Assembly (NCBI GenBank): GCA_965235115.1 | Contig: OZ249441.1 | Location: forward strand, 16,368,001 to 16,432,000 | Length of the DNA stretch: 64,000 nt | Direction of reading: 5' to 3' | From: Laetmonice hystrix | Lineage: Eukaryota | In this document: piece after piece, positions 11,151 through 59,915 of the stretch | How positions within the stretch are numbered: position 1 is the first letter of the stretch | Layout of the letters: the number at the start of each line of letters is the position of its first letter | The notes under the pieces: model-generated | Database searches by the model: none | What the model was told of the DNA's origin: nothing | What the model saw: the letters and a program-made list of their open reading frames with translations, nothing else | Translations under genes and position numbers: made by a program

Positions 11151-13588
11151 GTACGCTTGACAATGCTTCCGTCAGGCATGGCTGCATCCACTCATATTAT
11201 CACTACTCAGTCTCCACTTTTCTAGCTCTCCCCTCAATGTTGAAAGCAAACGCCGCCCCCCACCTCCGCCATCCTCGACCCAACCCACCCCCTTTGTACA
11301 GACGAGATCTTTTCGACCACTCTCAGGGTTCACACCACAAAAACATCAGCCGGCGAGTTGAGACGCGCCCTGACCACGTGTCTCACGGACGAGCCGACAA
11401 TTGGGCAATTTGCCCATTCTGCCATCTGAGCGATCGCCGTCATGCTGGCGTGCCCAAAGAGTATGACAAATCAAGCTCCGTTATCCTCACTTGGAATCCT
11501 CCCCACACAATGTGAGTCGAGGCAGAAACAGCACACTGGCAGGCGGTAATCACCGGCACATACGAAACGTAATCCGGCCACGCGAGTCGCTCTTGTATCA
11601 ACGACGAGCAGTACAGCTCCCCATCAAAGAAGGTCATAATTCTCCAGTATTTGTTCCTATATAATGCGATGCAAATTGGGCCAAACAATAGATCAATTTG
11701 AAAGCATTAGAAGCGTACCGTTTTGAAGTGCACTATCAAAAACGAAGTATGCACAGTTATGATATCCAATATGGGAGCCACTGAAATACCAGAGCACATT
11801 CACAGCCCTAGCACCGACTGGCATGGAAATCAATAATCTGATAGTCGGCATCTCTTCTCAGATATTTCACAAAAATAGCCACCATGGAAGCCTCAGCCCA
11901 GAGTTGGATCTTGAATCACGGTAGCAATAAAGTACACAGTTCGGTCTTGAATCAAGTATGCCTGTTTTTCTTAGGTCAGCCTTCAGTGCACAAATATACC
12001 AAGCATAATGAAATCCTGATTTGATTGTAACAAACAATATTTGAGTTATTTTTGTAACTATCTACATCTGTCCAAATACCTTTCCGATCACACTTTGAGT
12101 CAAGCAGCGTGTGATCTGATGTTATTCATTATTCCACAAGACATTTGGTGCTTTGTAAGCACTTTGTGGTGGAATCTTCATTATCCAACAGTTCATGCCT
12201 CCGATGTACGACTTTGTCTGCAATTAAACATTAACACGAACCTGATCTACATCAGAAGAATTTAAATATCTCGGTATTAAAACTAGTTTTATTTTACCTC
12301 GAGTGTTGAGGTTAACGAATATAATACGGACGATAGCCAGTTAGCACATGGCACAATGCGAGCAATTAAATAGTTTGTGTGATCGCTTGAATACATACAT
12401 AATGCAGACATGAGTTCGGATTCATACAATATCGGATTTCCTGTCGGGAGAACTGCATAGCGAGCGGATTTATGATAGCTGTGCTGTTTCTAGAAATTAC
12501 TAGACCTCTCTATGCTTCCTTTAATCATATTCACCTGTTGGGTGTAATGAGTAACCAGTTTAAAGTCGATTTATAAATAGTTCACGACTTCTTATGATCC
12601 GCAAGTTAAGCGTTTCAAATGTGCCCACCTGGAAATTGCGCGGCTTACGTTTCCATTCTGTGTTCCCACGACTTCCCGTTTACTGATAACAGAAATGGAA
12701 ACTTGCTTTAATGAAGAGAACAGCGGCCATGTTTGACTGCAGCATAAATATTTACCTCAGATTACGAGTCCAGCGTCAGTGGTAATCACCATCAATGATG
12801 AAGCCCCACCTGATGAGACCATTCCATGAGGACTGCTGGGTCCAAGGCTCACTTACATGCGGTGGTGAATTCCCAGTCTGCACTTCATGTCCTTGGTTTG
12901 GTAGACATTACCTGTTGACTAATAGATGCTGCTGTGAATTTCATCTCTTGGGTGCAGTTCACCAACTGCAGCAGTTCCCCCGCCTGAAACCTGGACCATC
13001 TCCTCCCCTGCCTTCATTGGATCCCAGTTGGATCCCAGGCACAATCTCAGCAAATACTACCGCGGGAACCATACAGGAAATATTCAACAATTGGCACTGT
13101 CTGTGTGATTTGAAAAATTACGGAATGAGAATGAGATGAAGTCTGGTAAATATTTCAGTTTTCATGAGCTCCCGCAATGGCAGGCACATAGATCAGAAAC
13201 TATCCGCTGGAGAATCCACTGGAAGGGGAGGGGGTATACGCCTGGATTGGTAATGCACTCTTATGCATATCTAAATGTATACAATTTAGTATGTATTATG
13301 TAAAACTGCCTTCAAATATCTAAATGCCGGCCAATTTTATGTCACTGGCCAAATCTCCGTAAATTCTTCTTGTCGATCTCCGACAATTTCAATCATCTGA
13401 GGTTATATGGAATGAAATAATCCTTGGTCATCTACTATACACGGAGAGGGGTATGGAGAATATGCGTGGATACCAGGCCAGCGTGTAACTGGTGACCTTC
13501 GATGAATATTGCATGGATGCAGTGTCCATGCTGACCACTACAAAGTGCTCTCTTAATTGTACTCCTGCCATGGGGGCGGAATAAGGAG

Positions 13589-14200
13589 ATTTCATAGTAC
13601 TAGAATAAGACGACTTCATAGTACCAGAATAAGACTTTATGGTACCAGAATAAGACTCTATAGTACCAGAATAAGACTTTATAGTACCAGAATAAGACTT
13701 TATAGTACCAGAATAAGACTTTATAGTACCAGAATAAGACTTCATAGTACCAGAATAAGACGACTTCATAGTACCAGAATAAGACTTTATGGTACCAGAA
13801 TAAGACTCTATAGTACCAGAATAAGACTTTATAGTACCAGAATAAGACTTTATAGTACCAGAATAAGACTTTATAGTACCAGAATAAGACTTCATAGTAC
13901 CAGAATAAGACGACTTCATAGTACCAGAATAAGACTTTATGGTACCAGAATAAGACTCTATAGTACCAGAATAAGACTTTATAGTACCAGAATAAGACTT
14001 TATAGTACCAAAATAAGACTGTATAGTACCAGAATAAGACTTCATAGTACCAGAATAAGACTTCATAGTACCAGAATAAGACTTTATGGTACCAGAATAA
14101 GACTCTATAGTACCAGAATAAGACTTTATAGTACCAGAATAAGACTTTATAGTATCAGAATAAGACTTTATAGTACCAGAATAAGAAGATTTCATAGTAC
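13589..14200. repeat. 21-bp minisatellite (tagtaccagaataagacttta) with 150-bp higher-order repeat
   Basis: Monomer period is 21 bp; the 24-bp variant cgacttcata recurs at 13611, 13761 and 13911. Confidence 0.97.
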
Positions 14201-17200
14201 ATTGACTGGGTAAGTATGAGCAGTGATCTTCACTGGATCCTGCACCTTATGTTTCTCTACGAGACCTAAACCTAGAGCATCACGCTTGGGGTTCGCAATG
14301 AATATATTTAGCAGAAGCTCTAACGGTGGAACCGGGAATAGCGCTGGCTGTGACAGTTCTCCTGAAAGATGCCATGAGCCTGCGATTCTATCATTATTGG
14401 CGGTACTGCCGAGCTGGCAGCGAGATTAGCGTAAAACCTTGTAATTTGTCGATCGATACCCATTACAGCAGACCCAGTACGGTGAGGAACGGAGAAGATT
14501 TTAATATCGGCCTGATCTGGGTGCTGTGCCAAGCCCCCTGGCAACTTTGTCTGCGTGTAGAACAGAGAGGGGTAGGATGAGAGGATGGGCTGAGAGATCT
14601 GACGTTAGTTCTAGGGTGATCAGTTCCCATACTAATTCTAGAGCTCATAGAAAATATCTACATGAATGTTACAGTCTGCTAACCCACCTCAAAGGTCCCT
14701 ACCATTTTATTACCTCAGCAATCATCACATAGCGCACCTTGTGAAACGACATTGCTAAAATATCAAGATAATGTTCGAGCCGCCCACACTGATCAAAACA
14801 TGAAGATAACACACTGGAAACGCTCATATCTTGTAAATCTAGTGAGAATATAAGTCTCAAGATGCTTCATACTTCTTCAGGATAACCATTGTCGCTGCAA
14901 CTATCGAGTTACGGATAGTATTGATTGGCCCGACGCACTTCTCCTTCTGTATCTGAAATCAACCAACATCTTCAATTGCTGGCATTCAACATTAATGGCA
15001 CGTCATGGTATCAAAAACAGCTTAGGGCACTTTGTCTTTTTATCGAGCTCACTGAATTGGATTTTTTAGCTCATTACCGGAAGCACACCAGTTAATCATT
15101 TGTGTGGCATTGTCCAGGCAGAAATACATAACTGGCAAAGGCAATATGAGCGCTGCATCGACACTGCTGAACCTTGCAACGTTTTGCCTTATCTCATATA
15201 TCAAGACAGCGGGCCGCAGCAATGATGCTATCAGATAACCCGATCAGAATGATAACCAGTGAAGAATGCCGCCGACTTTGGATAGAGAGTGTTAATGGTG
15301 CCTCTTATATGGTGCCTCTTATATGTGGCAGTCCCACTGGGTATTGCTATGGTGCCAGTGATCAGACCGGCGCTCCAAATTGAACATTCCCACGTTCCCA
15401 GCCGACTGAATGCATGTAGCGCTCCAGCGGCCCTCGGCGGGGAGGGAGGGATGGAGGGTGGGGAGAACTGCATGGGCCCAGGGGGTCTGGGTTTCCTGTG
15501 GCTAATCCGTGAGGGGAGGCACCCTAACATGTATCCTCCCTGGCAACTTCACCAAGATCATGAGCAGGGTGCTCGGATGATGACGGTCTTACTTAAACAC
15601 CACCGTCGATTTACTACCACCTATTATGCAGACCTGAAGGCAATAAGTGCTATGCCGGTAAAGCGAAATGGGATAATATCATTATGACCGCTTTATTCTT
15701 TACTTTGTGCTGGTCTGCAACAGTTTTTTTTATTCATGGTATCTTCTCATCAAGTGAGATATTCAGTACAGACACAGCTTAAACCAGGGCAATCACCGGG
15801 CTTCTAATTCCATGGTCCTCCACTACGTCAGTCAACCGTCATCACATCTTCAACAATTACAATTTACAAAACAGTCATAAATATCCTCACATCCTGAATT
15901 TTTCAATATTTCATATTGCCATATTATTCTAATAAATAACAAAGTGAAATCGAAACATACTAGTACTACTGCTACACCATGAGTGACATGTCTAAATTCC
16001 ATATCAGCCTTTTCTGCTCACTTGAAAACAAAATAGGCATGCATCAAATCTTGAGTTTTACCCTCACCCTTTCCATTACGATCGTAAACGAAAAACACTG
16101 CGTATCATCCGCTATTTACTTTGGCATTTTCTAAGTGTGCGAGATTCTGTATGAGTAAATGTTTGGCGCTCTGTCAACCTCTTTCTTCACGACTGTGCAT
16201 TGATGCTAAAAATTCCTCTTTTATATTTGACAGGCAGTGATTAATTACAGCTCAGTAACAATCAAGCCGGTGACTTTCTATTCCTGTCCTTATGTCAGTT
16301 TTACACGGCTCTGTTTCTTTCTGTCATGAATGTTCAAGAATGAGGCACTGGCACCCTTTTCTTTTTGTTATTGTTTTTCACATTTTCCCAATCATCGACT
16401 CAAGTTTCCTTATTTCCACTTCATGACTCATGCCGGTTTCTATTTTATATTGGCATGATGTTTGCCGCTGTAAAGTGCTTTGAATGATGACATTGTTTGC
16501 GTCTGTGCTTCTCCAATGATCGGTTATCATGCTAGGTTAGAATGTGGCTGATTCCGATAGCATCCCTAGGGACAACGCCCATCTCCTGGCTGGCGTTTTG
16601 CCCACTGTATTTTGTCGCCTCTGTCTCTGTGGAACTCTAACTGCACTCGCAATGGATGCCTTCTATACTGACATCGTCGCCTCGCGATCATTATCACCTC
16701 GCCACTGATCACCACACACGAACTTTCACCATTTGCTTTTTTCATTTTTTCAATACAAAGGTTCAACGTCGTGCATCACGACATTCGTCGGCTAAAAACA
16801 ACATCATGGGGCAGCTTGATACCACACGCTACTTTGAATGGTACGTCATAACGTCATCGGAGTAACATTATTTTAATTATAACCAATCTTTAATAAGATT
16901 CATTAAAAAAACGGCCTTTTCAATCAGGCAGCGGAGAGGTCTTATTCCTCCACAAAGTGGCGCTTTCTTTTGACTACGACCTTTCCTCTGATCTCTTTAT
17001 CTTAGCGAATGACACAGTTCTCGAGTCAAAACACTTCAAAACACATTATTAGTTGTGGAGGAGTTCATCATATATTCAATAGCAAGGCCGATTATCACAT
17101 CCAACACCTGATCACCCATGGCCATATTCACTGTGACCGTCTGTCACTGAATACGTTCAGCAGATTTATTCTGAAGCCCTCAATTTATACATAAAATACA

Positions 17201-26087: not shown

Positions 26088-27135
26088 CAAAACAAATACT
26101 GAGACAGCAGTGTTAAAGCAACCACTGAGGACGGCCTTACCAAAACAAATACTGAGACAGCGGTGTCAAGGCAACCACTGAGGACGGCCTTACCAAAACA
26201 AATACTGAGACAGCAGTGTCAAAGCAACCACTGATGAGGACGGCCTTACCAAAGCAATCACTGAGGACGGCTTTACCAAAGCAACCACTGAGGACGGCCT
26301 TCCCAAAGCAACCACTGAGGACGGTCTTACCAAAGCAACCACTGAGGACGGCCTTCCCAAAGCAACCACTGAGGACGGTCTTACCAAAGCAACCACTGAG
26401 GACGGCCTTCCCAAAGCAACCACTGAGGACGGTCTTACCAAAGCAACCACCGAGGACGGCCTTACCAAAGCAACCACTGAGGACGGCCTTACCAAAGCAA
26501 TCACTGAGGACGGCCTTACCAAAGCAACCACTGAGGACGGCCTTACCAAAGCAACCACTGAGGACGGTCTTACCAAAGCAACCACTGAGGACGGCCTTAC
26601 CAAAGCAATCACTGAGGACGGCCTTACCAAAGCAACCACTGAGGACGGTCTTACCAAAGCAACCACTGAGGACGGCCTTACCAAAGCAACCACTGAGGAC
26701 GGTCTTACCAAAGCAACCACTGAGGACGGCCTTACCAAAGCAATCACTGAGGACGGCCTTACCAAAGCAATCACTGAGGACGGCCTTACCAAAGCAACCA
26801 TTGAGGACGGTCTTACCAAAGCAACCACTGAGGACGGCCTTACCAAAGCAATCACTGAGGACGGCCTTACCAAAGCAATCACTGAGGACGGCCTTACCAA
26901 AGCAATCACTGAGGACGGTCTTACCAAAGAAACCACTGAGGACGGCCTTACCAAAGCAATCACTGAGGACGGCCTTACCAAAGCAATCACTGAGGACGGC
27001 CTTACCAAAGCGATCACTGAGGACGGTCTTACCAAAGAAACCACTGAGGACGGCCTTACCAAAGAAACCACTGAGGACGGCCTTACCAAAGCAACCACTG
27101 AGGACGGCCTTACCACAGAAACCACTGAGGATGAC
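26088..27135. repeat. 27-bp minisatellite (accaaagcaaccactgaggacggcctt), preceded by 53-bp composite units
   Basis: About 33 tandem 27-bp units; this array explains the ORFs at 26137-27187. Confidence 0.97.
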
Positions 27136-27848
27136 TCTAAAGGACAAACGGTCAAGAAAACAATCATTCACACTCGAGCAGAACTGACATCCACCCTGCC
27201 TAGAGAATTATTTTTCTGGTCATTCAGGCCCAGGCAGTCCATCTCTAAAACACTACGACATTTAATTAGACAATTTCCTGGAGATAAGGCACCAGACTAT
27301 CAGCACCAATACAGTATCTCTTTATCTATACACTGACCATTTTATGCGTAATGAAAGTAATGATCGAATGATAACTATAACAGGGAGAGATATAGAGATA
27401 AATCTAGCTGTGATATCTCACCGGTTTCCAGCTCACAGCTCTGGCCCGGGTCGATATTCAACCAAGTACATTTAATTGAGAGAATTTTTGATGCAGGAAG
27501 CGGATATAACTGTGAAAGGGTAATGAACACACCACAGGCTGAAACAAAGATCCTGTTTTGATTGGACGCAGTGAACACAATACAATGAGAGCCACAAAAC
27601 ACGAGCCGCCACAACAGAAAAAGGAATGCGACATTAGGATTCTAATTCAAACGGACAAATATCTCAAGTTCAATTAGAATATCAAAAGGGTATAAGAACA
27701 TTACACTGTGTGGGCTATGGGGATACTTCCCATGCTAACAATCCTACCAAATTAGGAATAGGCCTAAGGATAAGGAAATACTAGGTAAGGATAGGTTTTT
27801 AGTTTCGTCACTAAGTTACTATGGGGCCAACTTGTTGCACATGCCACT

Positions 27849-35400: not shown

Positions 35401-38400
35401 CCCACTGAAATTATACCAATCAAATCACATGAAATACTAACGTTCTGGTAGATTTGATGGAATAAATATGATGATACCAGGCCTACTGAATATGATACCA
35501 GGCCTACTGAATATGATACCAGGCCTACTGAATATGATACCAGGCCTACTGAGTATGATACCAGGCCTACTGAATATGATACCAGGCCTACTGAATATGA
35601 TACCAGGCCTACTGAATATGATACCAGGCCTACTGAACATGATACCAGGCCTACTGAATAATGACACCAGGCCTACTGAATATGATACCAGGCCTACTGA
35701 AAAGGCTTTTGAAGACATATGAAATATACAGTGGTGCTTACCTATGATACCAACAGACAGACCACCAAACGCTATTCCATTTGCCCAGGTTCTCTCCGCT
35801 TCATTTTGAAAGGCACAAGCTAGAAGTGCCAACCCTTAACAAAGAATATTAAATTCAACCATATTCCAAGTTATGCAACATCAATCAATTATCTTTTACA
35901 ACAGAGCATGCAAATACCTACTTTTAGTAAAAACGCATAATTACGCTAGATATTTTTCTGTTCTTTTTTGCCTGTCACTAACAGATATCTACTTAAATTC
36001 ATCATACCCGGTAACCTCATAGCACATGCACATAAACTGTTTTATCCAGCTATAAAGTAGACTAATGCTACTGTAGCTTTGCCATTTGCTGGATGGCCTC
36101 CTGGAGTAGATCAGAATTCTCCTGCCTCCTGTAGAGGTAAATGTCAATGATCCAAGGCCACAACATCACTTAGATCATATCGTCAAGAACCCTGTGACCT
36201 CTATGTACAATAATGGGGACGCGGCGTTCCTACCAGAGATGACCGTCAGGCTCGATCCGATGGCTTGGATCACCCTCATGGCCACCAGGAATCCAAAGTG
36301 GTCGACCCAAGCGAAACCTGGCGGGAGACGCCAGACAATCGCATTACTCATGCGGCAGAGGCGAATACAGGATCATGCACGGCCACTGTAACAGATTTCT
36401 AGGTCCCGCGGAAATGCAGGTCCGATGGACCTGCTAGCCCTAAAATATAGACTGCAAATCCGACGGATCTGCATTCCTAGGACTTCAAGTCCTTGATGTC
36501 CTACATGTCGCTGCCTTTCTGGCGAACCGTCCAATATGGGGGTTTTGGCGAAATTGAGTTTAGTAGATTCTTAATAATTTTGAAGAAATCTGTAATCCCT
36601 GAAAATTTCATTACCCTTCGGGCGAATATGAATTGTCTTCGATTTACTTTTCGGTGAACCGTCGAATATTCATATTCGACGGTTCTCCGAAATTATTTGT
36701 ACGTACTTGATAATTTTTTTTACGGCGAACCGGCGAATATAGAAATCATGCCCAAATAAGGTAATGATATGAGCAGTGATCACGTATGGTTTCCATAGCA
36801 ACACGTCGAATATTCACGGGCGAGATACAAGTTTTCCGGCGAACCGTCGAATATGCGTCGAATATGACATAAAGTCACGTAGAACTTTTCCGGGACTTGG
36901 ATCGCACCTGTTATCTCCCCACATTAACATGACAGGGCTAGAGATTCTCGTTTTTTTTTTTTTTTTTTTTTTTTTTTGGGGGGGGGGGGGGGGGCTGGGA
37001 TTAAGGAATAGAATTATGTTTTTCAGGTTCTTACCACTATACTTGGTGGAGAAGTCACCATGGAGTTTTAAGATTTACCACGGGGCCCAGTCCAACATGC
37101 GAAGTTAGGGACCAAGTGACTTTCTCATCAGACGGGCAATCCCTCCCCCACATTGCTTCCCCCACACACTGTTCTTTCTTTAATTGAAAACTTACCCAAA
37201 CTGACGGGAAAGAGTCTGACTAAAAACAGGGGCAAAACCATAGGCTCTTCAAGTGCATTAGAGATCACTTACCGAGGGTGGCGACGAAATTACATACACA
37301 TCCTCCTACCATCGGCCCTTTGTGACCATACCTGAGAAACCAAACAAATCAGTATGTCACATATCGTACCATCGGCCCATTGTGACCATACCTGAGAAAC
37401 CAAACAAATCAGTATGTCACATATCGTACCATCGGCCCATTGTGACCATACCTGAGAAACCAAACAAATCAGTATGTCACATATCGTACCATCGGCCCTT
37501 TGTGACCATACCTGAGAAACCAAACAAATCAGTATGTCACATATCGTACCATCGGCCCTTTGTGACCATACCTGAGAAACCAAACAAATCAGTATGTCAC
37601 ATATCGTACCATCGGCCCTTTGTGACCGTACCTGAGAAACCAAACAAGACAGTATGTCACATATCGTACCATCGGCCCTTTGTGACCGTACCAGAGAAAC
37701 CAAACAAATCAGTATGTCACATATCGTACCATCGGCCCTTTGTGACCGTACCTGAGATACCAAACAAATCAGTATGTCACATATCGTACCATCGGCCCTT
37801 TGTGACCATACCTGAGAAACCAAACAAATCAGTATGTCACAATATCGTACCATCGACCCATTGTGACCATACCTGAGATACCAAACAAATCACTATGTCA
37901 CATATCGTACCATCGGCCCTTTGTGACCGTACCAGAGAAACCAAACAAATCAGTATGTCACACATGCTCCTACCATCGGCCCTGTGTGACCATACCTGAG
38001 ATACCAAACAAATCAGTATGTCACATATCATACCATGGGCCCTTTGTGACCATACCTGAGATACCAAACAAATTAGTAAATTAATCAGGTACCTCCCCCC
38101 ATTTTAAAATCAGGTTATAAATCATATATCAATAAATTATCAGTTTACTATAGACAATATTGAGTAGAGGGACGAAATCTTCCATGTATAATGTAATTTC
38201 TCAGTTCACAAGTTTATAGGTCCCCCTGGCACCTTTAGATATTGATGTCTTTTACAGGACCAAAGTGAGAAAAGGTCACCGATTGCTTGCCTGTCGACAA
38301 CAAATCCTATGAGGATATTGGCGAGGATTTCTGTGGCTGGCTTGGCGGCTATTATCATACCAGCCCGCCGTGTGGTATGAAGGATAGTTGAGTTGACGGC

Positions 38401-44600: not shown

Positions 44601-47136
44601 ACACGTTCTTTTATTTTGTTATGTTATAATAATATTTTAATATTATAGACAATGCTTTGGGCAAAAATATATTACCAAACTCAGTATAGAACTGCGTATA
44701 TATGACAGCTACGTGTACCTGAATGAATTAACTCATTACATGAATGTATGAGTGAGTGAATGGTTGAACTATAAGTAACGAGTAGAGATATCAAACCTGA
44801 GACAGGATGCTATGACGCCTGCGGTGGCCGCCATGGTGACGGCCAGTATGGTGACCACGCCTGTGATGAGAACGATGTCTACCATGGGACCCATGCTTCC
44901 TTCCCTCTGCCGCCAACTGCTGCTTCCCCCGCCCCGGGATCCTGACAGGCTTCATGGACTTCTCAAACCACCAACCGTGCTTCCCGTTCAAGGGATACTT
45001 TTGATCCCCGTCGACTTCAGGTTTTATCTTACTAGGTCTTCTCCACTGAGGACGTATGTCGTATCCCTGGCCGCCATTCCTCGATACGCCAGCCGCCTCA
45101 TCTTCCTCACCGTGGTCCACAGTGTCATCATCTTCACTAAGGTCTGTAGTGTCATCCCAGTCCTTAGTGGCTGTGTCCAGTCCGACGCTGTCAAAGTCCT
45201 CATTACTTGCCACAACATCTTCTAATTCGGCTGAGATAATTTGAACAATAAGATATAGAAAGATTCGTAACATGGTAATCATGTGTATATCTCATAATGT
45301 CACATTGTGTATGTATGTATGTTATGTAGATCACATAAAGACATTCATACCAAGACATGGTTGTTTCAAAGTGAAAACATTCAATGTCACATCTATCATG
45401 TGTATATCTCATAATGTCACATTGTGTATGTATGTATGTATGTAGATCACATAAAGACATTCATACCAAGTCATGGATGTTTCAAAGTGAAAGCATTCAA
45501 TGTCACATCTATCATGTGTATATCTCATAATGTCACATTGTGTATGTTATGTAGATCACATAAAGACATTCATACCAAGACATGGTTGTTTCAAAGTTAA
45601 AACATTCAATGTCACATCTATCATGTGTATATCTCATAATGTCACATTGTGTATGTATGTAGATCACATAAAGACATTCATACCAAGACATGGATGTTTC
45701 AAAGTGAAAGCATTCAAAGTCACATCTATCATGTTTATATCTCATAATGTCACATCGTGTATGTATGTATGTTATGTAGATCCCATAAAGACATTCATAC
45801 CAAGACATGGTTGTTTTAAAGTGAAAGCATTCAATGTCACACCTACCATGTGTATATCTCATAATGTCACATTGTGTATGTATGTAGATGCCATAAAGAC
45901 ATTCATACCAAGACATGGTTGTTTTAAAGTGAAAGCATTCAATGTCACATCTATCATGTTTATATCCCATAATGTCACATTGTGTATGTATGTATGTTAT
46001 GTAGATCCCATAAAGACATTCATACCAAGACATGGTTGTTTTAAAGTGAAAGCATTCAATGTCACATCTACCATGTGCCTGTGGGTAACTCGAGACGAGC
46101 TCAAGTGGTTTTGAATGATAAAATGACGTTATCGATACATACCCATATTCTCGTCCACGACATCGAGAAGGTTAGTGTACATTACGTCAGCATCTTCACC
46201 ATTGCTGCCTGGAAAGAGAGTCAGCAGTATGGTCTGAGGAATTATACAGTAGTATACAGTAAAACAGACAATCACAAAAGGTTTGTAAGTTCCTTCTCCG
46301 TGTAATTATCTCTCTCACTTAGTGTTAACAAGTTTGGATGCCATAAATGTTGGGGACTTTACACATCGGCATATCTCGGCTGATTCTGAATTGGACTCGA
46401 GGAAATAATTCCTAGACTCGTGAATGGTACAATATATTTTTGATAAATAGTTGGTTAAATTAAAAAGTCTTCCTTGCGATCTCGACACGCAGTTTACAGT
46501 TTAACTGAATCCGCACAACAATAACACAAAAGGGTTCGAAGTCCAGTCTGAGTGTCGTTTTGAAAACTCGACGCAAACCCAAGACAAGCGTTCCCTAATA
46601 TTGATTGATTGCAGATCAAAAGTCCGAACACGCATGGCAGTAAGGGTGATCTCTTGTGAAGTTTGTCGAATACATACACGAATATATAAACCGATCTTTT
46701 CTTGTATCAAAGTTACATTTCTGTGGGATCATAGGCCATCTATAATCTTTCCAATGTGTATATTTTAATCTCCAATCTATACAATATATGTAACAGGATA
46801 AAGTTTTCTCCAATCAGCCTGAGAAAATAAGGCGAATGAACCAAGAAGTAGATACCGCGATGTTCTCTCAAAAAGTCTGTTTGGTCAGAAGACAAGAGTA
46901 GATTAGATACCAGTGGAATAACTTTTACTATACTATTACGATATCGTTTCCCAAACCATGGTTCTCTGATCTGGATTTGCCCATACCGGTTATACAAATG
47001 TAATTAGATGACCTTTGACATTCTTACAAAGTAAAAGAACCGATAGGGGACTCTTACCTTCTTCATACTGGGCCACTACGGTGGTCACAAGTACCACAGC
47101 CCAGAACAGAGAGTAGATTCTGCCCCGTCCAACCAT
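41663..47136 (-). CDS. Secreted acidic/His-rich protein with ECM1/albumin-type cysteine doublets and an anaphylatoxin-like domain, 9 exons, about 477 aa
   Basis: Phase-consistent GT-AG exons: 47136-47058 (signal peptide MVGRGRIYSLFWAVVLVTTVVA), 46208-46143, 45230-44797, 44486-44319, 44132-43979, 43822-43746, 42560-42458, 42270-42093, 41837-41663 (1434 nt). Motifs QCCKNNITRVECF, TCCSVNGSARYSCF and LCCRAG..C..C....RCC. Confidence 0.8.
42838..43572. repeat. 53-bp minisatellite, about 14 copies, in intron 6 of the secreted-protein gene
   Basis: Unit aataaacacggcatggtcagggtgccagttgacattctcatactgttgactct. Confidence 0.97.
45278..46076. repeat. 108-117-bp tandem repeat, about 7 copies, with a variable internal (tatg)n, filling intron 2 of the secreted-protein gene
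   Basis: Unit starts near 45278, 45395, 45511, 45620, 45728, 45845, 45953 and 46070. Confidence 0.95.
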
Positions 47137-50907: not shown

Positions 50908-51586
50908 TCCGGGGCTAATTTATTGCATGCCGGGGCTAGGCTAGACTAGACTAAAGTAAAGGCAGCCGAGGCGGGTAGGCAAAATCAACGGGGGTCAGTC
51001 CCACAGTCACAGTCACAACTAAAACAGGTCTGTGCCGAACTGACCACAGGAGCCTGACACTGCCAGCACCCGCCCGCGGTCGGAGCCACGGTCAGGGCCC
51101 GGCCCAGTGGCCCTGCGGGCCCCGTCAACATCACCTCCGAGCGAGACGAATTGAATGCCGGCGGCCAAAACCCACGGCTGGAGCTTGCCCAGATCCCTGT
51201 CCACCCTGATATATCCCCTGACATCGGTAGGCTTAATTCCTAGCCATTCCTCATCACTATGATCGATGGTTTTCGTCTATGTTCTAACAAATTTTGCTTA
51301 TATAAATAAGCTGTCAACGTTCGCTCAACGCAACAGGTGCGTCAGTTTTTCGTTCCTCCCAAACCGGAGAGCAGTGGTTGGAGCATGCGCATTGTGAGAT
51401 TAGCCCAAGGAGCAGACAGCTATGGCCGCCATCACCAGCGGAGCAGGTTCTAAGCAGGCTCCGGCACTAAATGCTTATATCTTAACTATTTGAGCACCAA
51501 TTGTGTTCAAATCTTTTTTAAATTGCTTAGAATATCACGGCCTGTGTGCTTTGCCTGTACACACTGGCGGTGGACGTTTCTTTTAA

Positions 51587-52138
51587 GTAATACACAATCG
51601 ATCAGATCGGAACTATTAGGTAACACACAATCGATCAGATCGGAACTATTAGGTAATACACAATCGATGAGATCGGAACTATTAGGTAACACACAATCGA
51701 TGAGATCGGAACTATTAGGTAATACACAATCGATGAGATCGGAACTATTAGGTAATACACAATCGATGAGATCGGAACTATTAGGTAATACACAATCGAT
51801 GAGATCGGAACTATTAGGTAATACACAATCGATGAGATCGGAACTATTAGGTAATACACAATCGATGAGATCGGAACTATTAGGTAATACACAATCGATC
51901 AGATCGGAACTATTAGGTAATACACAATCGATGAGATCGGAACTATTAGGTAACACACAATCGATGAGATCGGAACTATTAGGTAATACACAATCGATGA
52001 GATCGGAACTATTAGGTAACACACAATCGATCAGATCGGAACTATTAGGTAACACACAATCGATGAGATCGGAACTATTAGGTAATACACAATCGATGAG
52101 ATCGGAACTATTAGGTAATACACAATCGATGAGATCGG
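51587..52138. repeat. 33-bp minisatellite (gtaatacacaatcgatgagatcggaactattag), about 17 copies
   Basis: Direct tandem periodicity; this array explains the ORFs at 51490-52190. Confidence 0.97.
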
Positions 52139-55100
52139 AATGAAGTACCCTCTCTCCTGTTACTGCCCAGTGCATGCGAACATGTTGCAATACTTTTGGT
52201 CAGTTAGTGTAGGTTTGGCGCAGCGACTTTAATTATACTGCTTGATTGGCCGGAACATTCAATAAACTCTCAAATCATTTACACTAGAAGACTAGTTCCA
52301 ACAGTTACAGCTCTATTTGTAACTTTAATGATAAGCTGATAGTCCACACTGACCCGAGCCTATCCTATCTTGGCTCGGATCCTTGTCCTTGGCTCTGCCA
52401 CAGAAGTGACGAATCTTGTTAATGAGGTTCATCCATCCTGTTCAGTGTCAGGAACATTAATGCTGAATCATATTTCCCGCCTTACACGTCTCTGCACTCT
52501 ACTGAGATTGCACACACTTCACATGTAATGTCTGTTACTAGTGTGGTAATAAAACTCTCATCTGTTGTACGCACGATTGATTAAAGAATTAAGTTCAACG
52601 TTTCCTCTATCAGACCAAATCTGCTGCATGCAAGTGAACGAGTGGGCTGAAGCTGTAGAATGCGTGTTGCTTGTCATTTACGCATAGAATGACAACCTAT
52701 TTTTTTTGTACTGCAAAAACGCCATGTCAGGGTTTTTCAACGTTGACGTCGGCTACTCTATAATGATACGTGAATCAGCTAAGGTAATGTGCGTACAGCA
52801 TCCCGTGGATGCAGGCATAACAATTTATAACGTCTCGGCCCAGGACATTTCATGATACCACCTGTATGTATACACGGCTGCATTATTCACCGGTACCTGT
52901 CTCATGTACGTGTTAACAAGATTCCGTTAGACATCCTGTGAGATCTAATGAGATGAGAGAGTGAGCCTGGTAGCCTCAGGTGGTCTCACATGGGTGTCAT
53001 AAGGAATATGCCATCACTGCGGGCGGGCACCGCCACATCTTCCCGCCTTAATGACAGTCGGCCCAGAGTCGACCCCTGAATATATTTTATTTCACTCCCA
53101 GATTATGGTTCTTGTGGGGTTACGAGCGCCCAGAGGTTGTGCTTTACATCCCCTGGACCCCGACAAATAACCGAAATCAAAGGAATGTGGTGCTGTTCTA
53201 CTGAGACATATGGCGAGGTCCACTAAAGCTAATTCCAGGATGGCTACAGTCTTTGGGATCAGGTTTTCGTTTGATGCTCGGCGCATTTTTTAGCCCATTC
53301 TTTGGTTGTTATACATCCACACTGAAACCAGGCTGACTAACCAGAATACAAGTGGCGTTTGTGTCTCTACTAAAACCAATGATAAGCGATGAGGAGAAAT
53401 AAAAATGCACAAAAACGTAAATTCAGACGATCAAAAGGCCTCTTAGCTTCTGGGCATGTGTAGGAAAGGAGCGATAAACGAAACACGTTACGTCCCTACA
53501 GCTGTGCTATGGATGGAACTGGCATGTTAACTCTGCAGTCGTATTAAAAGCACTGTCGAATACGTCGCCTTGAGTGCCAGAAAACCCTGCCTTAGGCCGC
53601 CAATGGATCACTGTGACAGTTTTAACGTGGGGAAGAAATTTACTTCCGCCTACTGCGCACTACCAATGGTGCAAGAAGGTGTAAAGGAAGGCTCTACGCT
53701 AGTTTTATGACCCGATTGGTATCAAGAGGAAAGGCTGTTTCTATAGTGCAATACAATTATTGCAGCATAGCTTGGACGATTTCAAGTCATATACTGATAT
53801 TTTATATGTTAGACTGTGATTAGCCCACATCTCTGGATCCTTGAGACATGGGTAGATCAGGGATGTTTTATTGGAAGATTATGGGTTTGGTTTAAATAAA
53901 TAAATACGTCTTAATTAAACGCCTCTTTTCTCTGAAACTTGCCTCATCTTACTGAAAACATGTCAGGTCAATAACTTTTAAACTTTTGAAAACTGTAAAT
54001 TTTAGACATCAAGTTCCTATAGCTTTTGTTCACAAACGCAAAAAAACTGATAGTGTTCTATATTACTTTTGCATACAAGAGGCAGAATTTATCTGCTAAC
54101 TTAAAACTTAAACCCTTTACAAGCAACATTGTCATTACAATACATATCAGGGTGCCTCACCACCAACCACAGTCTGTATGATTCCACGCATGATGAAGCC
54201 CGTGTGATGTAGTGCCTAATCTCAGAAACAGATCGATCATTATATAGCAACCCCCTCGGCCAATTCGTGCAGCCATTGGAGAACTGCAACCAATCACAGG
54301 TGGGGAGTTTAATTCACCATCAGTTGTCAGCACTAGATGGTGTGACAGAAAAGTGATGGCGATCCAAATGGATATAGTATATGTCGACCAGAAACACTGT
54401 CAAAGTCCGTCTACTGAAAGTGATGCCAGAACCCAATGCCCATGGGCAGTACCGCTCGCAGAACAGTTTAATGCTGTATGATATCCCAGAAACCAGAAAG
54501 TTATTCACTAAAGTACTCTATTGATTTGCGATATCAACTTTCATTATATTCGAACAAAGAAGTAAATTACCTAATATCTCTGGAATAAAAGAAAGGGGAA
54601 TTACAAATGATTATTTACAAAGAGATGACTTGCTCAGGGCTATAATGCGGCATCCCTATAGATATGATGGCAGCAAAATCATTCATGTGAAATACATGTA
54701 TATAATGGAAGGCGCTTGTGTTAGATCTTCCCTATCCCTCACCAAGACAGACTAGTTCCGTATTCATGTAGGATGGGGAAACCCAGGACAGTAACACTAC
54801 ATGGGGCTAATTCTGTATGCGCTCATTTACCACAGAGAGCCTCGCATTAATCAATGTTCTTTCCTGATTGATGGCCATTTAGGCAAATTAACATGATCCA
54901 TACATGGCACGGGCATAAACTAAGTCGACCGAAATTATGAATCACCCATCGGAACATTAATTAGGGCTTCCATGATAATGGCAGCTTTTGAAGGACGCGA
55001 AACCCTTTTAGATATAAGTGGGGTAACTCGGTGAGAGAATTAAATAACGCCCCATTATGTGTCAAATGCTGTCACCCATTACATGGTAACTTTGTGGTCT

Positions 55101-55441
55101 GGTGGTTTGCCCCAAAGTTACGAGAGCAAAGGATTCACTCTGTAATAATAATGTTTCCATAGACACCGAAACAGGCAGCCATCAAGACCAGACTTAAAGG
55201 GGATGCTTGCTGCAAATATTCCAATCTCATCAGTTACAACGGCAGTTTCCTGTGGCATTTTAAACTATGTTACTTCCCTTTGGAAGTATACAGTTGAATC
55301 GTTGAATCGCTACATTAGCCACCACAAGTGTGTCAACAGAGTTACAATGCTAATTTTACAATACTGTATTTTCATGACAAGTCAAGTTCTTTAGTTGGGT
55401 CCATAAGAGTACTGTTTTACTCATCCAGAACATGCAAATAT

Positions 55442-57811
55442 CAGCAGTGTGAAGTTAGGATCTGGTACACGGTACACGGTACACGATTCGCCAAACCAGG
55501 ATCTTATTCAGGAAATAGGATCCGATTCGAATCTACGGGGCAGGGGGACTAATGAATGGTCCCCAGGGACTCTTCTCCTCGTGGACTATCCATGACTAGG
55601 AGGAAGTTCTCCTACAATTGTTTTCAGGGGTCACGCTGGGTCACCAAACTTAGATATATGAGGATTTCCCGGAAAATGTCACGTCTCGGTCCACTGAGGG
55701 TCCCCTACGGGGCAGGGGGACTAATGAATGGTCCCCAGGGACTCTTCTCCCCATGGACTATCCATGACTAGGAGGAAATTCTCCTACAATTGTTTTCAGG
55801 GGTCACGCTGGGTCACCAAACTCCAATGATATATGAGAATTTCAGGAAAATTGTCACATCTCGGTCCACTGACGGTCCCCTACGGCACAGGGGGACTAAT
55901 GAATGGTCCCCAGGGACTCTTCTCCCCATGGACTATCCATGACTAGGAGGAAATTCTCCTACAATTGTTTTCAGGGGTCACGCTGGGTCACCAAACTCCA
56001 ATGATATATGAGAATTTCAGGAAAATTGTCACATCTCGGTCCACTGACGGTCCCCTACGGCACAGGGGGACTAATGAATGGTCCCCAGGGACTCTTCTCC
56101 CCATGGACTATCCATGACTAGGAGGAAATTCTCCTACAATTGTTTTCAGGGGTCACGCTGGGTCACCAAACTTAGATATATTAGGATTTCCCGGAAAATG
56201 TCACGTCTCGGTCCACTGAGGGTCCCCTACGGGGCAGGGGGCCTAATGAATGGTCCCCAGGGACTCTTCTCCTCGTGGACTATCCATGACTAGGAGGAAG
56301 TTCTCCTACAATTGTTTTCAGGGGTCACGCTGGGTCACCAAACTTAGATATATGAGGATTTCCCGGAAAATGTCACGTCTCGGTCCACTGAGGGTCCCCT
56401 ACGGGGCAGGGGGACTAATGAATGGTCCCCAGGGACTCTTCTCCCCATGGACTATCCATGACTAGGAGGAAGTTCTCCTACACTTGTTTTCAGGGGTCAC
56501 GCTGGGTCACCAAACTCCAATGATATATGAGAATTTCAGGAAAATTGTCACATCTCGGTCCACTGACGGTCCCCTACGGCACAGGGGGACTAATGAATGG
56601 TCCCCAGGGACCCTTCTCCTCGTGGACTATCCATGACTAGGAGGAAGTTCTCCTACAATTGTTTTCAGGGGTCACGCTGGGTCACCAAACTTAGATATAT
56701 GAGGATTTCCCGGAAAATGTCACGTCTCGGTCCACTGAGGGTCCCCTACGGGGCAGGGGGACTAATGAATGGTCCCCAGGGACTCTTCTCCCCATGGACT
56801 ATCCATGACTAGGAGGAAGTTCTCCTACAATTGTTTTCAGGGGTCACGCTGGGTCACCAAACTCCAATTATATATGAGAATTTCAGGAAAATTGTCACAT
56901 CTCGGTCCACTGACGGTCCCCTACGGCACAGGGGGACTAATGAATGGTCCCCAGGGACCCTTCTCCTCATGAACTATCCGTGACTAGGAGGAAGTTCGCC
57001 TACAATTGTTTTCAGGGGTCACGCTGGGTCACCAAACTTAGATATATGAGGATTTCCCGGAAAATGTCACGTCTCGGTCCACTGAGGGTCCCCTACGGGG
57101 CAGGGGGACTAATGAATGGTCCCCAGGGACTCTTCTCCCCATGGACTATCCATGACTAGGAGGAAATTCTCCTACAATTGTTTTCAGGGGTCACGCTGGG
57201 TCACCAAACTCCAATGATATATGAGAATTTCAGGAAAATTGTCACATCTCATTGGAGTTTGGTGACCCAGCGTGACCCCTGAAAACAATTGTAGGAGAAC
57301 TTCCTCCTAGTCATGGATAGTCCATGGGGAGAAGAGTCCATAGGGACCATTCATTAGTCCCCCTGTGCCGTAGGGGACCGTCAGTGGACCGAGATGTGAC
57401 AATTTTCCTGAAATTCTCATATATCATTGGAGTTTGGTGACCCAGCGTGACCCCTGAAAACAATTGAAGGAGAATTTCCTCCTAGTTATGGATAGTCCAT
57501 GGGGAGAAGAGTCCCTGGGGACCATTCATTAGTCCCCCTGCCCCGTAGGGGACCCTCAGTGGACCGAGACGTGACATTTTCCGGGAAATCCTCATATATC
57601 TAAGTTTGGTGACCCAGCGTGACCCCTGAAAACAATTGTAGGAGAACTTCCTCCTAGTCATGGATAGTCCACGAGGAGAAGAGTCCCTGGGGACCATTCA
57701 TTAGTCCCCCTGCCCCGTAGATTCGAATCGGATCCTATTTCCTGAATAAGATCCTGGTTTGGCGAATCGTGTACCGTGTACCGTGTACCAGATCCTAACT
57801 TCACACTGCTG
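55442..57811. mobile_element. Foldback-type non-autonomous DNA transposon: long modular inverted repeats built from 172/175-bp tandem units, with TSD
   Basis: The outer ~90 bp are a perfect inverted pair (cagcagtgtgaagttaggatctgg... / ...ccagatcctaacttcacactgctg). There are about 10 units in the left arm and about 3 inverted units in the right arm, with the strand switch at 57250/57251. Flanking direct repeat caaatat (55435-55441, 57812-57818), extendable to 9 bp gcaaatatc. Confidence 0.9.
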
Positions 57812-58073
57812 CAAATATCTAGTTTACAAGGTTTAAATTAATAATATTGGACTCATAAGTAGTCATTGGACACGTTCTTCTCTTCCTTCTCCCTCGTCTT
57901 TTCTAGATTTTGTTCCACCTTATTGGTGGGGCTCACATAGGTCGTCCGACACAACTTGTGTCGACAGATCTGATAGGATCAGAGACCTGCACGCGTTCAT
58001 ATTGAGCGAATTATTCCCGCACTAAAGTCAATATCCACCAGAGCGTGTCGAGAAGCGAATCACCCCAGAACAG

Positions 58074-58087
58074 CCACTAGGTGGCGT
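58074..58087 (+). promoter_or_regulatory. CTCF-like site CCACTAGGTGGCGT
   Basis: Matches the CTCF core CCASYAGRKGGC; a second, reverse-oriented site (ccccagggggcgct) lies at 58221-58234. Confidence 0.4.
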
Positions 58088-59915
58088 CGCAGACGGTCAA
58101 GCTGGCGTTTTAACAAAAAAATGGGTAAAGTCTACTTACCAGTAGACCTCATCAAGTAGTGAGACCTGGCCAAAGGTTTAGTACCGAGAAACGCTGTGGA
58201 CAGATTTTCAGGGCGGCATCAGCGCCCCCTGGGGTGTACTATGTGGACTATGTCGGCAAGCGAGCGTTCAAATTGAAGTTACGCGACGTCTACCGACATA
58301 GCTCTGCCCCTAATTTACCCGAAATAACTCGGGGGCTTATACGACGTGCGTTATGTCGGACGAGTGCGTTCGTGTGGCCACGCGAAACAGCGGGTAGGCG
58401 TTGGAACAAGCCTCCAATGTGAACGCGGGGTAAGAAACATAACCCCGTGCAATCACCCCTGATGTGGACTCTATCATAACATGCCATGACTGTATATAAC
58501 GAAACTAAGCCTTCCTAATATGTCTGGGTGCAAGTTTCCCATTAAAAAATCCATTTCGCCCCTTAAGGTAGCGATCGGTCATTCTCCCGCACTTAATTGT
58601 GAGCGTGATCAAGTGCTGCTACATCGAAGGCCCTTGGTCACTAGGGCGACGGGTTCGCCATGATCGAACGGAGGGTCAACTTATATAGACGGAGGGCAAG
58701 ACAAAGGGCAGGGTGCCATTGGCTATGTACGGGCACTGCCTTGACCCATGCAACTACTCACACCTAAGCCACCATGCTAGGTCAGCCAGCCAAGGAGAAA
58801 ATAAACTTGGTTGGATTTGAAGTCTGGGGCCGGTGAGGGCAGGTCTTTCAGGGAAAATCTCGCACTGATCGCGGTCTGCTTGCTCATTGACAACAAGTAA
58901 ATGCCCGCAATTTCCCTACCTGACCCATCAATATGGCGTAGGAAGTACCGGGCTAGACGGGGCAGTCTGAAGACGGAGGGGGCCGAAGTCTTTCCAATCC
59001 TGAAGGAAACCGATGGCGGCAAAACGTGTGTGCGTGTGGGTGGCTGTGGGTGGGTGGGTGGGGGGGGGGGGGGGTAGTGAGAAAAACAGGCCTAGACGTT
59101 TCATATCACACTGGGGCAGTTTTAACTCCAAAGGCATACACGAATTGTTCAACAGTTGTGCATAAAAATAAAATAGGTCTTTGCCCGCATGACGTTCGCC
59201 ATGAAGAAATCTTCAACCTGTAACGCAAAATAAATTTCTAAGCTGGGCTGAGCCACAAGTTAACGTGCCCAGATTCAGTTTTTCTCGTCCTCCTCCCGTG
59301 AAGAGCCAAGCCTAAGCCTTTATATACATAGACTCTAGCCTATATGCCCTTGTATGCCGGCCACGCACGTGGATTCAGATTAGGCCATTGGGACGTTTTA
59401 GAGGGGGGGGGGGCGCTTAAGCGGGGTAAGCCCCCCCCCCCCTGCACTAGGCCCTATGTAGGGCCTACGTAGGCCTAGTCGTACGCTAGATAGGCCTACA
59501 TTTTGTTCAATAGCGAATAGGCCTAGGCCTATAGACAAAAAAAGCTACATGACATTATTCAACATAGGTACACGTTTCACCTTAAAAGTTAGCCTAAACT
59601 CTCTAAAGTGGACAGCACTCAAATCAAGTCATGACATGAGGAACGCCTAATGATAGGGGCCTACAGCCCACATCGGGATGAAAATAACACATTAATGTAT
59701 GCCTACCTGAAACTGGAAAATCCTCAGTTACTATATTTACGCTCCTCGGAGGTGTCGAAAACATGCGGTAGTATATCCGTCACATTTCCTTGATATGGAA
59801 CCGTAGCAGCCTACAGTTCACTGCATGTCGTTTTGGTTTAGAGTGAGCGAAGATGAGCTGTGCGCGTTTGCTGGCGACAGGACGCGCCACCTATCCGGAG
59901 TAGGAGGCAGTCGTT

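What the first reader, a model, noticed from the sequence alone, without database searches (positions are those of the whole stretch)
55435..57818. Complete Foldback-type element: a satellite array folded into a giant asymmetric hairpin with an intact TSD
Perfect terminal inverted sequences (with ggtacac x3 near each end) lead into 172/175-bp modules. The left arm is about 1.8 kb and the right about 0.56 kb, and they meet with only a ~30-nt loop at 57250. There is no coding capacity. The direct TSD rules out a simple foldback read chimera. TSD length is ambiguous: 7 bp with CAG..CTG ends fits Galileo/P-superfamily foldbacks, while 9 bp fits Mutator/FB-type. Such elements are known from Drosophila (FB, Galileo) and sea urchin (TU) and drive rearrangements. 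Near-identical arms imply a recent insertion, and this looks like an active family that is also seeding a nucleosome-length satellite.
Basis: partly seen in the sequence, partly recalled or inferred. Interest (0 to 1): 0.8.

Follow-up and report, generated by a model that had tools for sequence, protein, structure and literature searches.

The report
Recently mobile foldback transposon, satellite arms
This is a real, recently inserted, non-coding "foldback" DNA transposon whose two inverted arms are built of 172/175-bp tandem repeats. It belongs to a family with about 200 recognisable ends in this genome, so it is a well-supported new member of a known kind, with one odd and unexplained scar next to many copies.

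Summary
Window 55443-57810 is a 2,368-bp foldback element. It has perfect 90-bp unique termini, a 1.8-kb left arm and a 0.56-kb right arm of 172/175-bp monomers, and a 35-nt unpaired centre. It is flanked by a perfect direct repeat.

The TSD is 9 bp (GCAAATATC), not 7. Across 64 independent ends, the base before AGCAG is not conserved.

- **Family:** the genome holds about 207 such termini. At least 30 are paired copies of 0.7-19.5 kb, and 10 of these have perfect 9-bp TSDs.
- **Recent insertion:** contigs from public reads of the same species contain the exact empty site with one TSD copy, so the insertion is polymorphic or hemizygous.
- **No transposase:** none was found in any copy. MULE genes exist elsewhere in the genome but are not linked to this family.
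- **Best reading:** a non-autonomous Foldback-type element, probably of the Mutator superfamily. It is closely analogous to Drosophila FB/Tetris and nematode Tm1.
- **Satellite claim:** only partly supported. Arrays reach about 14 kb, but essentially all lie inside elements.

One thing is unexplained. At roughly a third to half of all ends, the outer 2-4 bp of the TSD copy is replaced in register by ..GCT, the complement of the element's own terminus, exactly 5 nt outside the end.

The scan also noted other foldback elements in this genome; I did not test them.

The parts
55434..55442 (.). Left copy of the 9-bp target-site duplication, GCAAATATC
   Evidence: Identical to 57811-57819. The empty-site contig keeps exactly one copy.
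55443..55532 (+). Left unique terminal domain (90 bp). It starts AGCAGTGTGAAGTTAGGATC, carries GGTACAC x3 at 55464-55484 and three AGGATC motifs.
   Evidence: A 92-bp query (55444-55535) covering this domain and the first bases of the array matches 9 ends on 4 chromosomes at 100%. About 207 termini genome-wide match the first 20 nt with up to 2 mismatches.
55533..57215 (+). Left arm: about 10 tandem monomers alternating 172 and 175 bp (a 347-bp dimer as the higher-order unit)
   Evidence: TRF period 172/347 with 92-94% matches. Dimers are 99-100% identical to copies on C20, C2 and C5.
57216..57250 (+). Unpaired 35-nt centre (loop). It is the continuation of the last left-arm monomer beyond the symmetry point.
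   Evidence: Sequence, inverted-repeat map and fold. The only Rfam matches at the centre, overlapping this loop, are sub-threshold miRNA-hairpin models.
57251..57720 (-). Right arm: about 2.7 monomers in inverted orientation
   Evidence: TRF period 175, 2.8 copies. It is 97-98% complementary to several registers of the left arm.
57721..57810 (-). Right unique terminal domain, the exact reverse complement of 55443-55532
57811..57819 (.). Right copy of the 9-bp target-site duplication, GCAAATATC

Best explanation
Window 55443-57810 is one copy of a non-autonomous, Foldback-type cut-and-paste DNA transposon family. Each end carries a 90-bp unique domain that presumably binds a transposase. Inside it lies a variable-length array of about 172/175-bp repeats in inverted orientation. 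The element inserts with a 9-bp staggered target cut. It encodes nothing itself and must be mobilised in trans, most likely by a Mutator-superfamily (MULE/Phantom-like) transposase encoded elsewhere in the genome.

- **Shown:** the structure, the family, the 9-bp TSD, the empty allele and the lack of coding capacity.
- **Inferred:** the superfamily (from TSD length and the precedent of other foldback elements), trans-mobilisation, and that arm-length differences arise by unequal exchange or repair within the tandem arrays.
For: - **Structure:**
- **Family:** 207 termini against 0-2 for the control pattern. More than 30 paired copies of 0.7-19.5 kb share the terminus-array-inverted array-terminus layout with very different arm lengths.
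- **TSDs:** 10 copies have perfect 9-bp TSDs of unrelated sequence and 3 more are near-perfect. The centre of the TSD is A/T in 52 of 64 ends.
- **Terminus:** position -1 is unconserved, so the element starts at A.
- **Empty site:** it is present in all three read sets of the species at the depth of the unique flank and reduces to one TSD.
- **Recency:** the 92-bp terminus query is 100% identical at 9 ends on 4 chromosomes, and dimers are 99-100% identical between chromosomes.
- **No transposase** in any copy: only nested LINE, Copia and DIRS-like elements, plus weak MADF and DUF6589 relics.
- **A possible trans source:** the genome holds at least 40 MULE-domain matches, several with intact 600-1157-aa frames in near-identical pairs.
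- **Precedent:** Tetris has 8-10-bp TSDs, tandem-repeat TIRs and no autonomous copy, and was assigned to Mutator (PMC4079207). Tm1 is a Mutator/Foldback family with 9-bp TSDs (PMC3169594).
Against: - No autonomous copy with these termini was found.
- None of the MULE or DUF6589 matches lies within a known element interval.
- The superfamily therefore rests on TSD length alone. Merlin elements also make 8-9-bp TSDs (from my own knowledge, not tested).
- The occupied allele was not independently seen in the read contigs. Its junction k-mers run into repeats, so heterozygosity within one individual is inferred rather than shown.
- Muta1, the one MULE studied biochemically, makes hairpins on the flanking DNA (PMC5499845). 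That does not obviously produce the element-derived GCT patch seen beside many copies here.
Confidence: 0.85

Rival explanations
1. It is a foldback element, but of a superfamily other than Mutator that also makes about 9-bp TSDs. This could be Merlin or an undescribed group, possibly one that uses transposon-end hairpins.
For: - No link to any MULE gene was found.
- The ..GCT-N5 patch implies a strand in which the element's 3' end is joined to the complementary strand 5 nt into the flank. That resembles piggyBac-type transposon-end hairpins (PMC7351741) more than the flank hairpins of Muta1 (PMC5499845).
Against: - Most foldback families with 8-10-bp TSDs that have been resolved are Mutator-like (PMC4079207, PMC3169594).
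- MULE transposase genes with intact frames are abundant in this genome.
Confidence: 0.3
2. It is a Galileo/P-superfamily foldback with CAG...CTG ends and a 7-bp TSD.
For: At this one copy, the C before AGCAG and the G after CTGCT allow a parse with a 7-bp TSD.
Against: - Position -1 is A11/C14/G22/T17 across 64 ends, so the C is not part of the element.
- Ten other copies show unambiguous perfect 9-bp repeats directly abutting AGCAG/CTGCT.
Confidence: 0.02
3. It is an assembly artefact (a chimeric foldback read) or a palindrome formed in place from a satellite array, not a transposon.
For: Long inverted repeats are a known artefact of some long-read libraries. The read contigs do not bridge the occupied junctions.
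Against: - The same termini bound more than 30 elements at unrelated loci, each with its own TSD.
- The empty site differs from the occupied one by exactly the element plus 9 bp.
- One copy interrupts a minisatellite whose sister units preserve the uninterrupted target.
Confidence: 0.01
4. It is a Helitron/Helentron-borne satellite-like array, as described for bivalve genomes.
For: - The window's NHL protein looks molluscan.
- Dispersed satellite-like arrays in oysters are carried by Helentrons (PMC7492417).
Against: Perfect terminal inverted repeats and 9-bp TSDs are present. From my own knowledge, not tested here, Helitrons and Helentrons have neither.
Confidence: 0.01

Closest known systems
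Tetris (Drosophila virilis foldback transposon; PMC4079207)
   Same: - Each TIR is a unique outer domain followed by an array of tandem repeats (220 bp in Tetris).
- The middle region is variable and there is no ORF.
- TSDs are 8-10 bp and no autonomous copy is known.
- The TIR repeats can expand into satellite-like arrays.
   Different: - The sequence is unrelated and the host is in another phylum (the host here looks molluscan).
- Monomers here are 172/175 bp and organised as a 347-bp dimer.
- Many more structurally complete copies with TSDs are present here: at least 13, against 3 for Tetris.
- An independent large satellite derived from the repeats was not seen here.
Drosophila FB (Foldback) elements and nematode Tm1, the Mutator/Foldback group (PMC3169594)
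   Same: - TSDs are 9 bp.
- Composite TIRs of variable length are built from tandem sub-repeats.
- Most copies are non-coding.
- Tm1 showed no target consensus. Here there is only a central A/T preference.
   Different: - The sub-repeats of FB and Tm1 are short (10-31 bp and about 14 bp), not nucleosome-length monomers.
- FB-NOF and Tm1-A copies carry a transposase, whereas none was found here.
- No TSD-distal GCT patch is reported for them in the passages I read.
Galileo (P superfamily foldback-like element; PMC3573991, PMC4168063)
   Same: Long, internally repetitive TIRs, large structural variation among copies, and association with rearrangements.
   Different: Galileo makes 7-bp TSDs and encodes a P-like, THAP-domain transposase. 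Here the TSD is 9 bp and there is no transposase.
piggyBac excision chemistry (PMC7351741)
   Same: This is a resemblance of inferred mechanism only. The patch ..CTGCT-N5-AGCAG.. has the strand connectivity of a transposon-end hairpin made by attack a fixed few nucleotides into the flank.
   Different: piggyBac uses a 4-nt offset, a TTAA target and a 4-bp TSD. Here the offset would be 5 nt within a 9-bp TSD of any sequence. No piggyBac relationship is claimed.

Membership tests
Foldback-type DNA transposon (structural class) | Long terminal inverted repeats that make up most of the element and fold into one hairpin | tested here: met
   Arms of about 1.8 kb and 0.56 kb are 97-98% complementary, with a 35-nt centre.
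Foldback-type DNA transposon (structural class) | TIRs built of tandem sub-repeats, with arm length varying between copies and between the two arms | tested here: met
   TRF period 172/175/347. Copies of 0.7-19.5 kb have very unequal arms.
Foldback-type DNA transposon (structural class) | Dispersed multi-copy family with conserved outermost termini and target-site duplications | tested here: met
   About 207 termini. Thirteen copies have perfect or near-perfect 9-bp TSDs.
Foldback-type DNA transposon (structural class) | Evidence of mobility (occupied versus empty site) | tested here: met
   The empty-site joint 55432->57810 skips 2377 bp, with 10 letters shared, in three read sets. The sister units of a minisatellite give a paralogous empty site for a second copy.
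Mutator superfamily (MULE/Phantom/FB-NOF) | TSD of 9 bp (range 8-10) | tested here: met
   The N6 patch spacing at 6 of 38 ends hints at occasional 10-bp events.
Mutator superfamily (MULE/Phantom/FB-NOF) | Autonomous relatives with the same termini that encode a MULE DDE transposase | tested here: not met
   No transposase was found in about 30 copies examined. None of the 40 PF10551 matches lies inside an element interval.
Mutator superfamily (MULE/Phantom/FB-NOF) | Excision through hairpins on the flanking DNA (shown for Muta1, PMC5499845) | not testable with these tools
   This needs biochemistry or excision footprints. The GCT patch is not what flank hairpins predict.
P superfamily (Galileo-like) | 7-8-bp TSD and a THAP/P-type transposase | tested here: not met
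   The TSD is 9 bp and position -1 is not conserved. No transposase was found.
Satellite DNA derived from a transposon | Long arrays of the monomer outside transposon copies | tested here: inconclusive
   Nearly all of the 150 dimer matches listed lie inside known elements. A few arrays have no exact terminus nearby: C11:29822560-29826399 (about 3.8 kb, one orientation), C3:33943-34618 and C10:1167323-1168535. The longest single arm is about 14 kb and lies inside an element (L048/L049).

The most novel reading that the evidence does not exclude
The in-register ..(T)GCT patch, fixed 5 nt outside the terminus and copied from the element's own 3' end, may be a scar of the transposition chemistry itself. 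For example, a transposon-end hairpin or strand switch could form by attack 5 nt into the flank on the non-transferred strand, be mis-resolved, and be re-ligated with part of the flap. That would mean a foldback family with 9-bp TSDs uses piggyBac/Tn5-like transposon-end hairpins rather than the flank hairpins known for Mutator. It would also mean abortive excision can be read directly from genomic copies.
Probability: 0.2. Interest if true: 0.75.

Novelty: new member of a known kind. Interest (0 to 1): 0.5.

Why it matters
Foldback elements are hard to assemble and little studied outside Drosophila, nematodes and a few plants. This genome offers a young family with many structurally complete copies, a segregating insertion, and arms that grow from under 1 kb to about 14 kb of nucleosome-length repeats. 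That makes it a good natural series for studying how transposon TIR repeats expand toward satellite DNA, and how long palindromes are tolerated.

The element-derived patch in the TSD, if it reflects the enzyme's chemistry, would give a sequence-only readout of where the unknown transposase cuts. It would also give a handle for identifying that enzyme.

Tried and rejected
1. **Autonomous partner.**
   - I examined the interiors of about 30 copies. Pfam on the longest open frames found only a sub-threshold MADF fragment, a nested LINE (APE+RT), a nested Copia-like element (RVT_2+rve), DIRS-like pieces and a weak DUF6589 fragment.
   - Genome-wide PF10551 and PF20231 matches do not coincide with element intervals.
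   - The central 2-kb region of subfamily-2 copies is itself a mosaic of another palindromic repeat and a roughly 370-bp tandem repeat, not a gene.
2. **More flanks and the MULE gene ends.** I did not try to get the letters another way. Only a count-type pattern search was run.
3. **Target preference for TGCT-N-AGCA** as the explanation of the patch. This is rejected because perfect-TSD copies lack the motif, the two TSD copies of a patched element differ, and the minisatellite copy shows the uninterrupted target is TTCACAGTT.
4. **A 5-bp TSD with extra bases, and a longer terminus that includes TGCT-N5.** These are rejected because the N5 is target-derived and the flanks beyond it share no repeat.
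5. **Mechanisms that do not give the observed product.** These were considered on paper, without a tool test: flank-hairpin P-nucleotides, off-centre opening of a transposon-end hairpin without an offset, and carry-over of donor flank.
6. **Rfam.** Only sub-threshold miRNA-precursor models match the central hairpin (65.8 bits against a cutoff of 100). There was no ribozyme or other RNA family.
7. **Species range.** Only the one sample of organism A holds at least 0.6 of the family's words. Other organisms hold 0.05, which is not interpretable.
8. **Organism.** Not identified by name. Atlas neighbours of the NHL protein are mostly molluscan.

Full report
**1. The observation**

- The element runs from 55443 (AGCAGTGTGAAGTTAGGATCTGG...) to 57810 (...CCAGATCCTAACTTCACACTGCT).
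- The outer 90 bp at each end are unique sequence and exact reverse complements. Each contains GGTACAC three times (55464-55484 on the left).
- Tandem Repeats Finder reports a period of 172 (9.9 copies) and, scoring higher, 347 (5.0 copies, 94% matches) for 55533-57250. It reports a period of 175 (2.8 copies) for the inverted array up to 57720. The monomers therefore alternate between a 172-bp and a 175-bp variant.
- The inverted-repeat search pairs 55442-56037 with 57216-57811 (596 nt, 97%). It also pairs the right arm with several registers of the left arm at 96-98%.
- The arms turn at a 35-nt unpaired stretch, 57216-57250.
- Folded as single-stranded DNA, 56650-57820 forms one continuous stem at -563 kcal/mol.
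- GCAAATATC flanks both ends.
- The only open frames are a 71-aa frame repeated with the monomer, which has no credible Pfam match (the only hit is at chance level, E 0.14).
- Rfam gives only sub-threshold miRNA-hairpin matches at the centre.

**2. It is a transposon family**

The window is C6:16368001-16432000 of a 627-Mb assembly.

*Copies.* The first 20 nt of the terminus, with up to 2 mismatches, occur 95 times forward and 112 times reverse. The reversed control pattern occurs 0 and 2 times. Facing ends pair up at distances from 0.7 to 19.5 kb. I fetched about 30 such pairs. All have the layout terminus, direct array, inverted array, terminus, with very different and usually unequal arms.

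*Subfamilies.* There are two.
- One carries the 172/175-bp monomers of the window copy.
- The other carries the same termini but arms made of a different tandem repeat that shares only part of the monomer. It often has a 1.5-3.7-kb centre made of other repeats.

*TSDs.* Ten copies have perfect 9-bp direct repeats of unrelated sequence directly abutting AGCAG/CTGCT. Three more differ by one substitution or a 1-nt indel. Across 64 unique ends the base before the terminus is A11/C14/G22/T17. So the C at 55442 is flank, the element starts at A, and the TSD is 9 bp rather than 7. The middle base of the TSD is A or T in 52 of 64 ends.

**3. Recent mobility**

- A 92-bp terminus query (55444-55535) is 100% identical at nine ends on four chromosomes.
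- Whole 347-bp dimers are 99-100% identical between the copies on C6, C20, C2 and C5.
- I laid the contigs of three public runs of the same species on the locus. All three runs come from one sample, which may be the assembled individual. In all three there is a joint from 55432 to 57810 that skips 2377 bases, with 10 letters fitting either side. Its depth equals that of the unique flank: 48.7, 28.4 and 62.1.
- 2377 equals the 2,368-bp element plus one 9-bp TSD. The 10 shared letters are the TSD plus a coincidental t.
- The contigs cannot show the occupied junction, because its k-mers run into the repeat. Whether both alleles sit in one individual is therefore inferred, not shown.
- Only this sample holds most of the family's words among the indexed runs.

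**4. What mobilises it**

No copy encodes a transposase.
- The longest interior frames are a nested LINE (endonuclease plus RT), a nested Copia-like element (RVT_2 plus integrase) and DIRS-like fragments. There are also a weak MADF piece and a weak DUF6589 piece, both below the Pfam cut-offs.
- The genome contains at least 40 MULE-domain matches, several in intact 600-1157-aa frames and in near-identical pairs. It also contains 39 DUF6589 matches. None lies within a known element interval.

The assignment to the Mutator superfamily therefore rests on the 9-bp TSD and on precedent. Tetris has tandem-repeat TIRs, 8-10-bp TSDs and no autonomous copy, and its authors placed it in Mutator on the same argument (PMC4079207). 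Tm1 is a Mutator/Foldback family with 9-bp TSDs and composite TIRs (PMC3169594). I put the Mutator assignment at roughly 0.55-0.6 and the foldback transposon reading at above 0.9.

**5. The satellite claim**

- The arms do behave like small satellites. One element, C5:5201441-5220958, has a right arm of about 14 kb.
- Nearly all of the 150 dimer matches listed lie inside bounded elements. The exceptions are short arrays such as C11:29822560-29826399 (about 3.8 kb, one orientation).
- Summed k-mer depth over the monomers is about 400-1,100 times the unique depth. That means roughly a thousand monomers, about what the elements themselves contain.
- So the family carries and expands a satellite-like repeat, but an independent satellite is not shown.

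**6. An unexplained scar next to many copies**

*The pattern.* In 64 unique ends, the flank shows T at -6 in 41, C at -7 in 32 and G at -8 in 27. Background for T, C and G is 0.30, 0.18 and 0.22. Genome-wide, among ends with an exact 20-nt terminus (at least 100), GCT sits exactly 5 nt outside the terminus at 31, 6 nt outside at 6, 4 nt at 1 and 7 nt at 0. About 1.7 are expected by chance at each spacing.

*What the copies look like.*
- GCT (often TGCT, sometimes CTGCT or CACTGCT) is the element's own 3'-terminal sequence, the complement of its first bases AGCA.
- Copies with the motif are exactly those with imperfect TSDs. The five TSD bases next to the element are kept, and the outer 2-4 bases are replaced.
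- Among about 26 paired copies, 13 are unmodified, 8 are modified at one end, 4 at both ends and 1 is unclear. This fits independent events at about one end in three.
- In the four two-sided copies the central TSD base agrees on both sides.
- In four partial cases the outermost one or two original bases are retained in place. The tract is therefore anchored at -6 and varies outward, in register.

*It is replacement, not target preference.* The copy at C2:1519437-1520425 sits in a minisatellite of about 77 bp. The sister units all read ...cataTTCACAGTTatat.... The occupied unit reads cata-TGCTCAGTT-element-TTCACAGTT-atat.

*What it implies.* The resulting string, ..CACACTGCT-X5..X9-AGCAGTGTG.., has the connectivity of the element's 3' end joined to the complementary strand 5 nt into the flank. 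A transposon-end hairpin would give this, as in piggyBac, where the offset is 4 nt (PMC7351741). So would snap-back synthesis. Partial incorporation of the resulting flap, against the intact opposite strand, would then keep the register. Muta1, the one MULE studied in vitro, makes hairpins on the flank instead (PMC5499845), which does not predict this scar. I could not find a fully satisfying pathway, and I report it as unexplained. The hairpin idea is speculative, at about 0.2.

**7. Verdict**

The finding is real and correctly interpreted in its essentials. It is a young, polymorphic, non-autonomous foldback transposon with a 9-bp TSD, from a family of roughly a hundred copies. Such elements, including ones whose TIR repeats turn into satellites, are known. 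It is therefore a new member of a known kind, apparently in a mollusc-like genome where I found no report of foldback elements in a quick literature search. The TSD patch is the one feature I cannot place.

First readers of this scan also noted four other foldback-like elements in this genome, including one 3.55 Mb upstream on the same chromosome. I did not test whether they belong to this family.

Noticed in passing
L009:1100-2900 (G000:C2:1519000-1520800): A family copy of 989 bp sits inside a minisatellite of about 77 bp (unit ...ggttccatggcgggccgtttcatattcacagttatataacggttc...). The sister units act as paralogous empty sites.
   Followed up: yes
L050:1750-9400 and L051:250-5600 (G000:C21:20754158-20769485): A 15-kb family copy is swollen by nested retroelements. 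These are an intact-looking 975-aa LINE ORF (APE+RT), a 1485-aa Copia-like gag-pol ORF, DIRS-like RT pieces split by the LINE, and a truncated DUF6589-like ORF.
   Followed up: partly
L048:3670-4580; stand-alone copies at G000 C1:23210341, C2:23024959, C4:25835925, C6:22726686, C7:8251628, C7:24418059: The centre of subfamily-2 copies contains a second, unrelated palindromic repeat of about 0.9 kb. It matches itself on both strands and also occurs on its own elsewhere, so it is probably another foldback or MITE family nested in this one.
   Followed up: no
L034:4080-5357, L035:3180-3870, L033:3020-4090: A G+C-rich minisatellite of about 63 bp lies at the centre of several subfamily-1 copies. 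It gives spurious proline-rich open frames of 230-425 aa in several frames.
   Followed up: no
L032:4517-4933 (-): An open frame in the centre of the C2:43368044 composite has a weak MADF DNA-binding-domain match (E 3.6e-4, below the Pfam cut-off). It may be a relic of a captured or ancestral gene.
   Followed up: partly
window 55233, 55242, 55303 (8-bp deletion), 55373; 57975-58019: The read contigs show a second haplotype in the left flank (three SNPs and an 8-bp deletion). They also show a 43-bp indel polymorphism just right of the element in all three runs.
   Followed up: no
window 57956-58150: K-mer depth jumps from about 50 to 1,000-4,500 starting 145 bp to the right of the insertion. 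Another repeat family therefore abuts the insertion site.
   Followed up: no
window 13428-14213, 26137-27187, 37290-37876, 45500-46114, 51490-52190: Five minisatellite arrays in the window give long repetitive open frames on both strands. The region is unusually rich in tandem repeats.
   Followed up: no
G000:C1:26020762 (-) and C11:13755590 (+) (L027, L023): Two family ends on different chromosomes share identical flanking sequence for at least 70 bp. This points to a segmental duplication or a larger repeat that carries a copy.
   Followed up: no
G000:C2:43368044-43383994 (L032, L059): A 16-kb composite has two same-orientation left ends (43368044 and 43373347) and one right end. The outer flanks do not form a simple TSD, so this may be a nested insertion or a rearranged copy.
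   Followed up: partly
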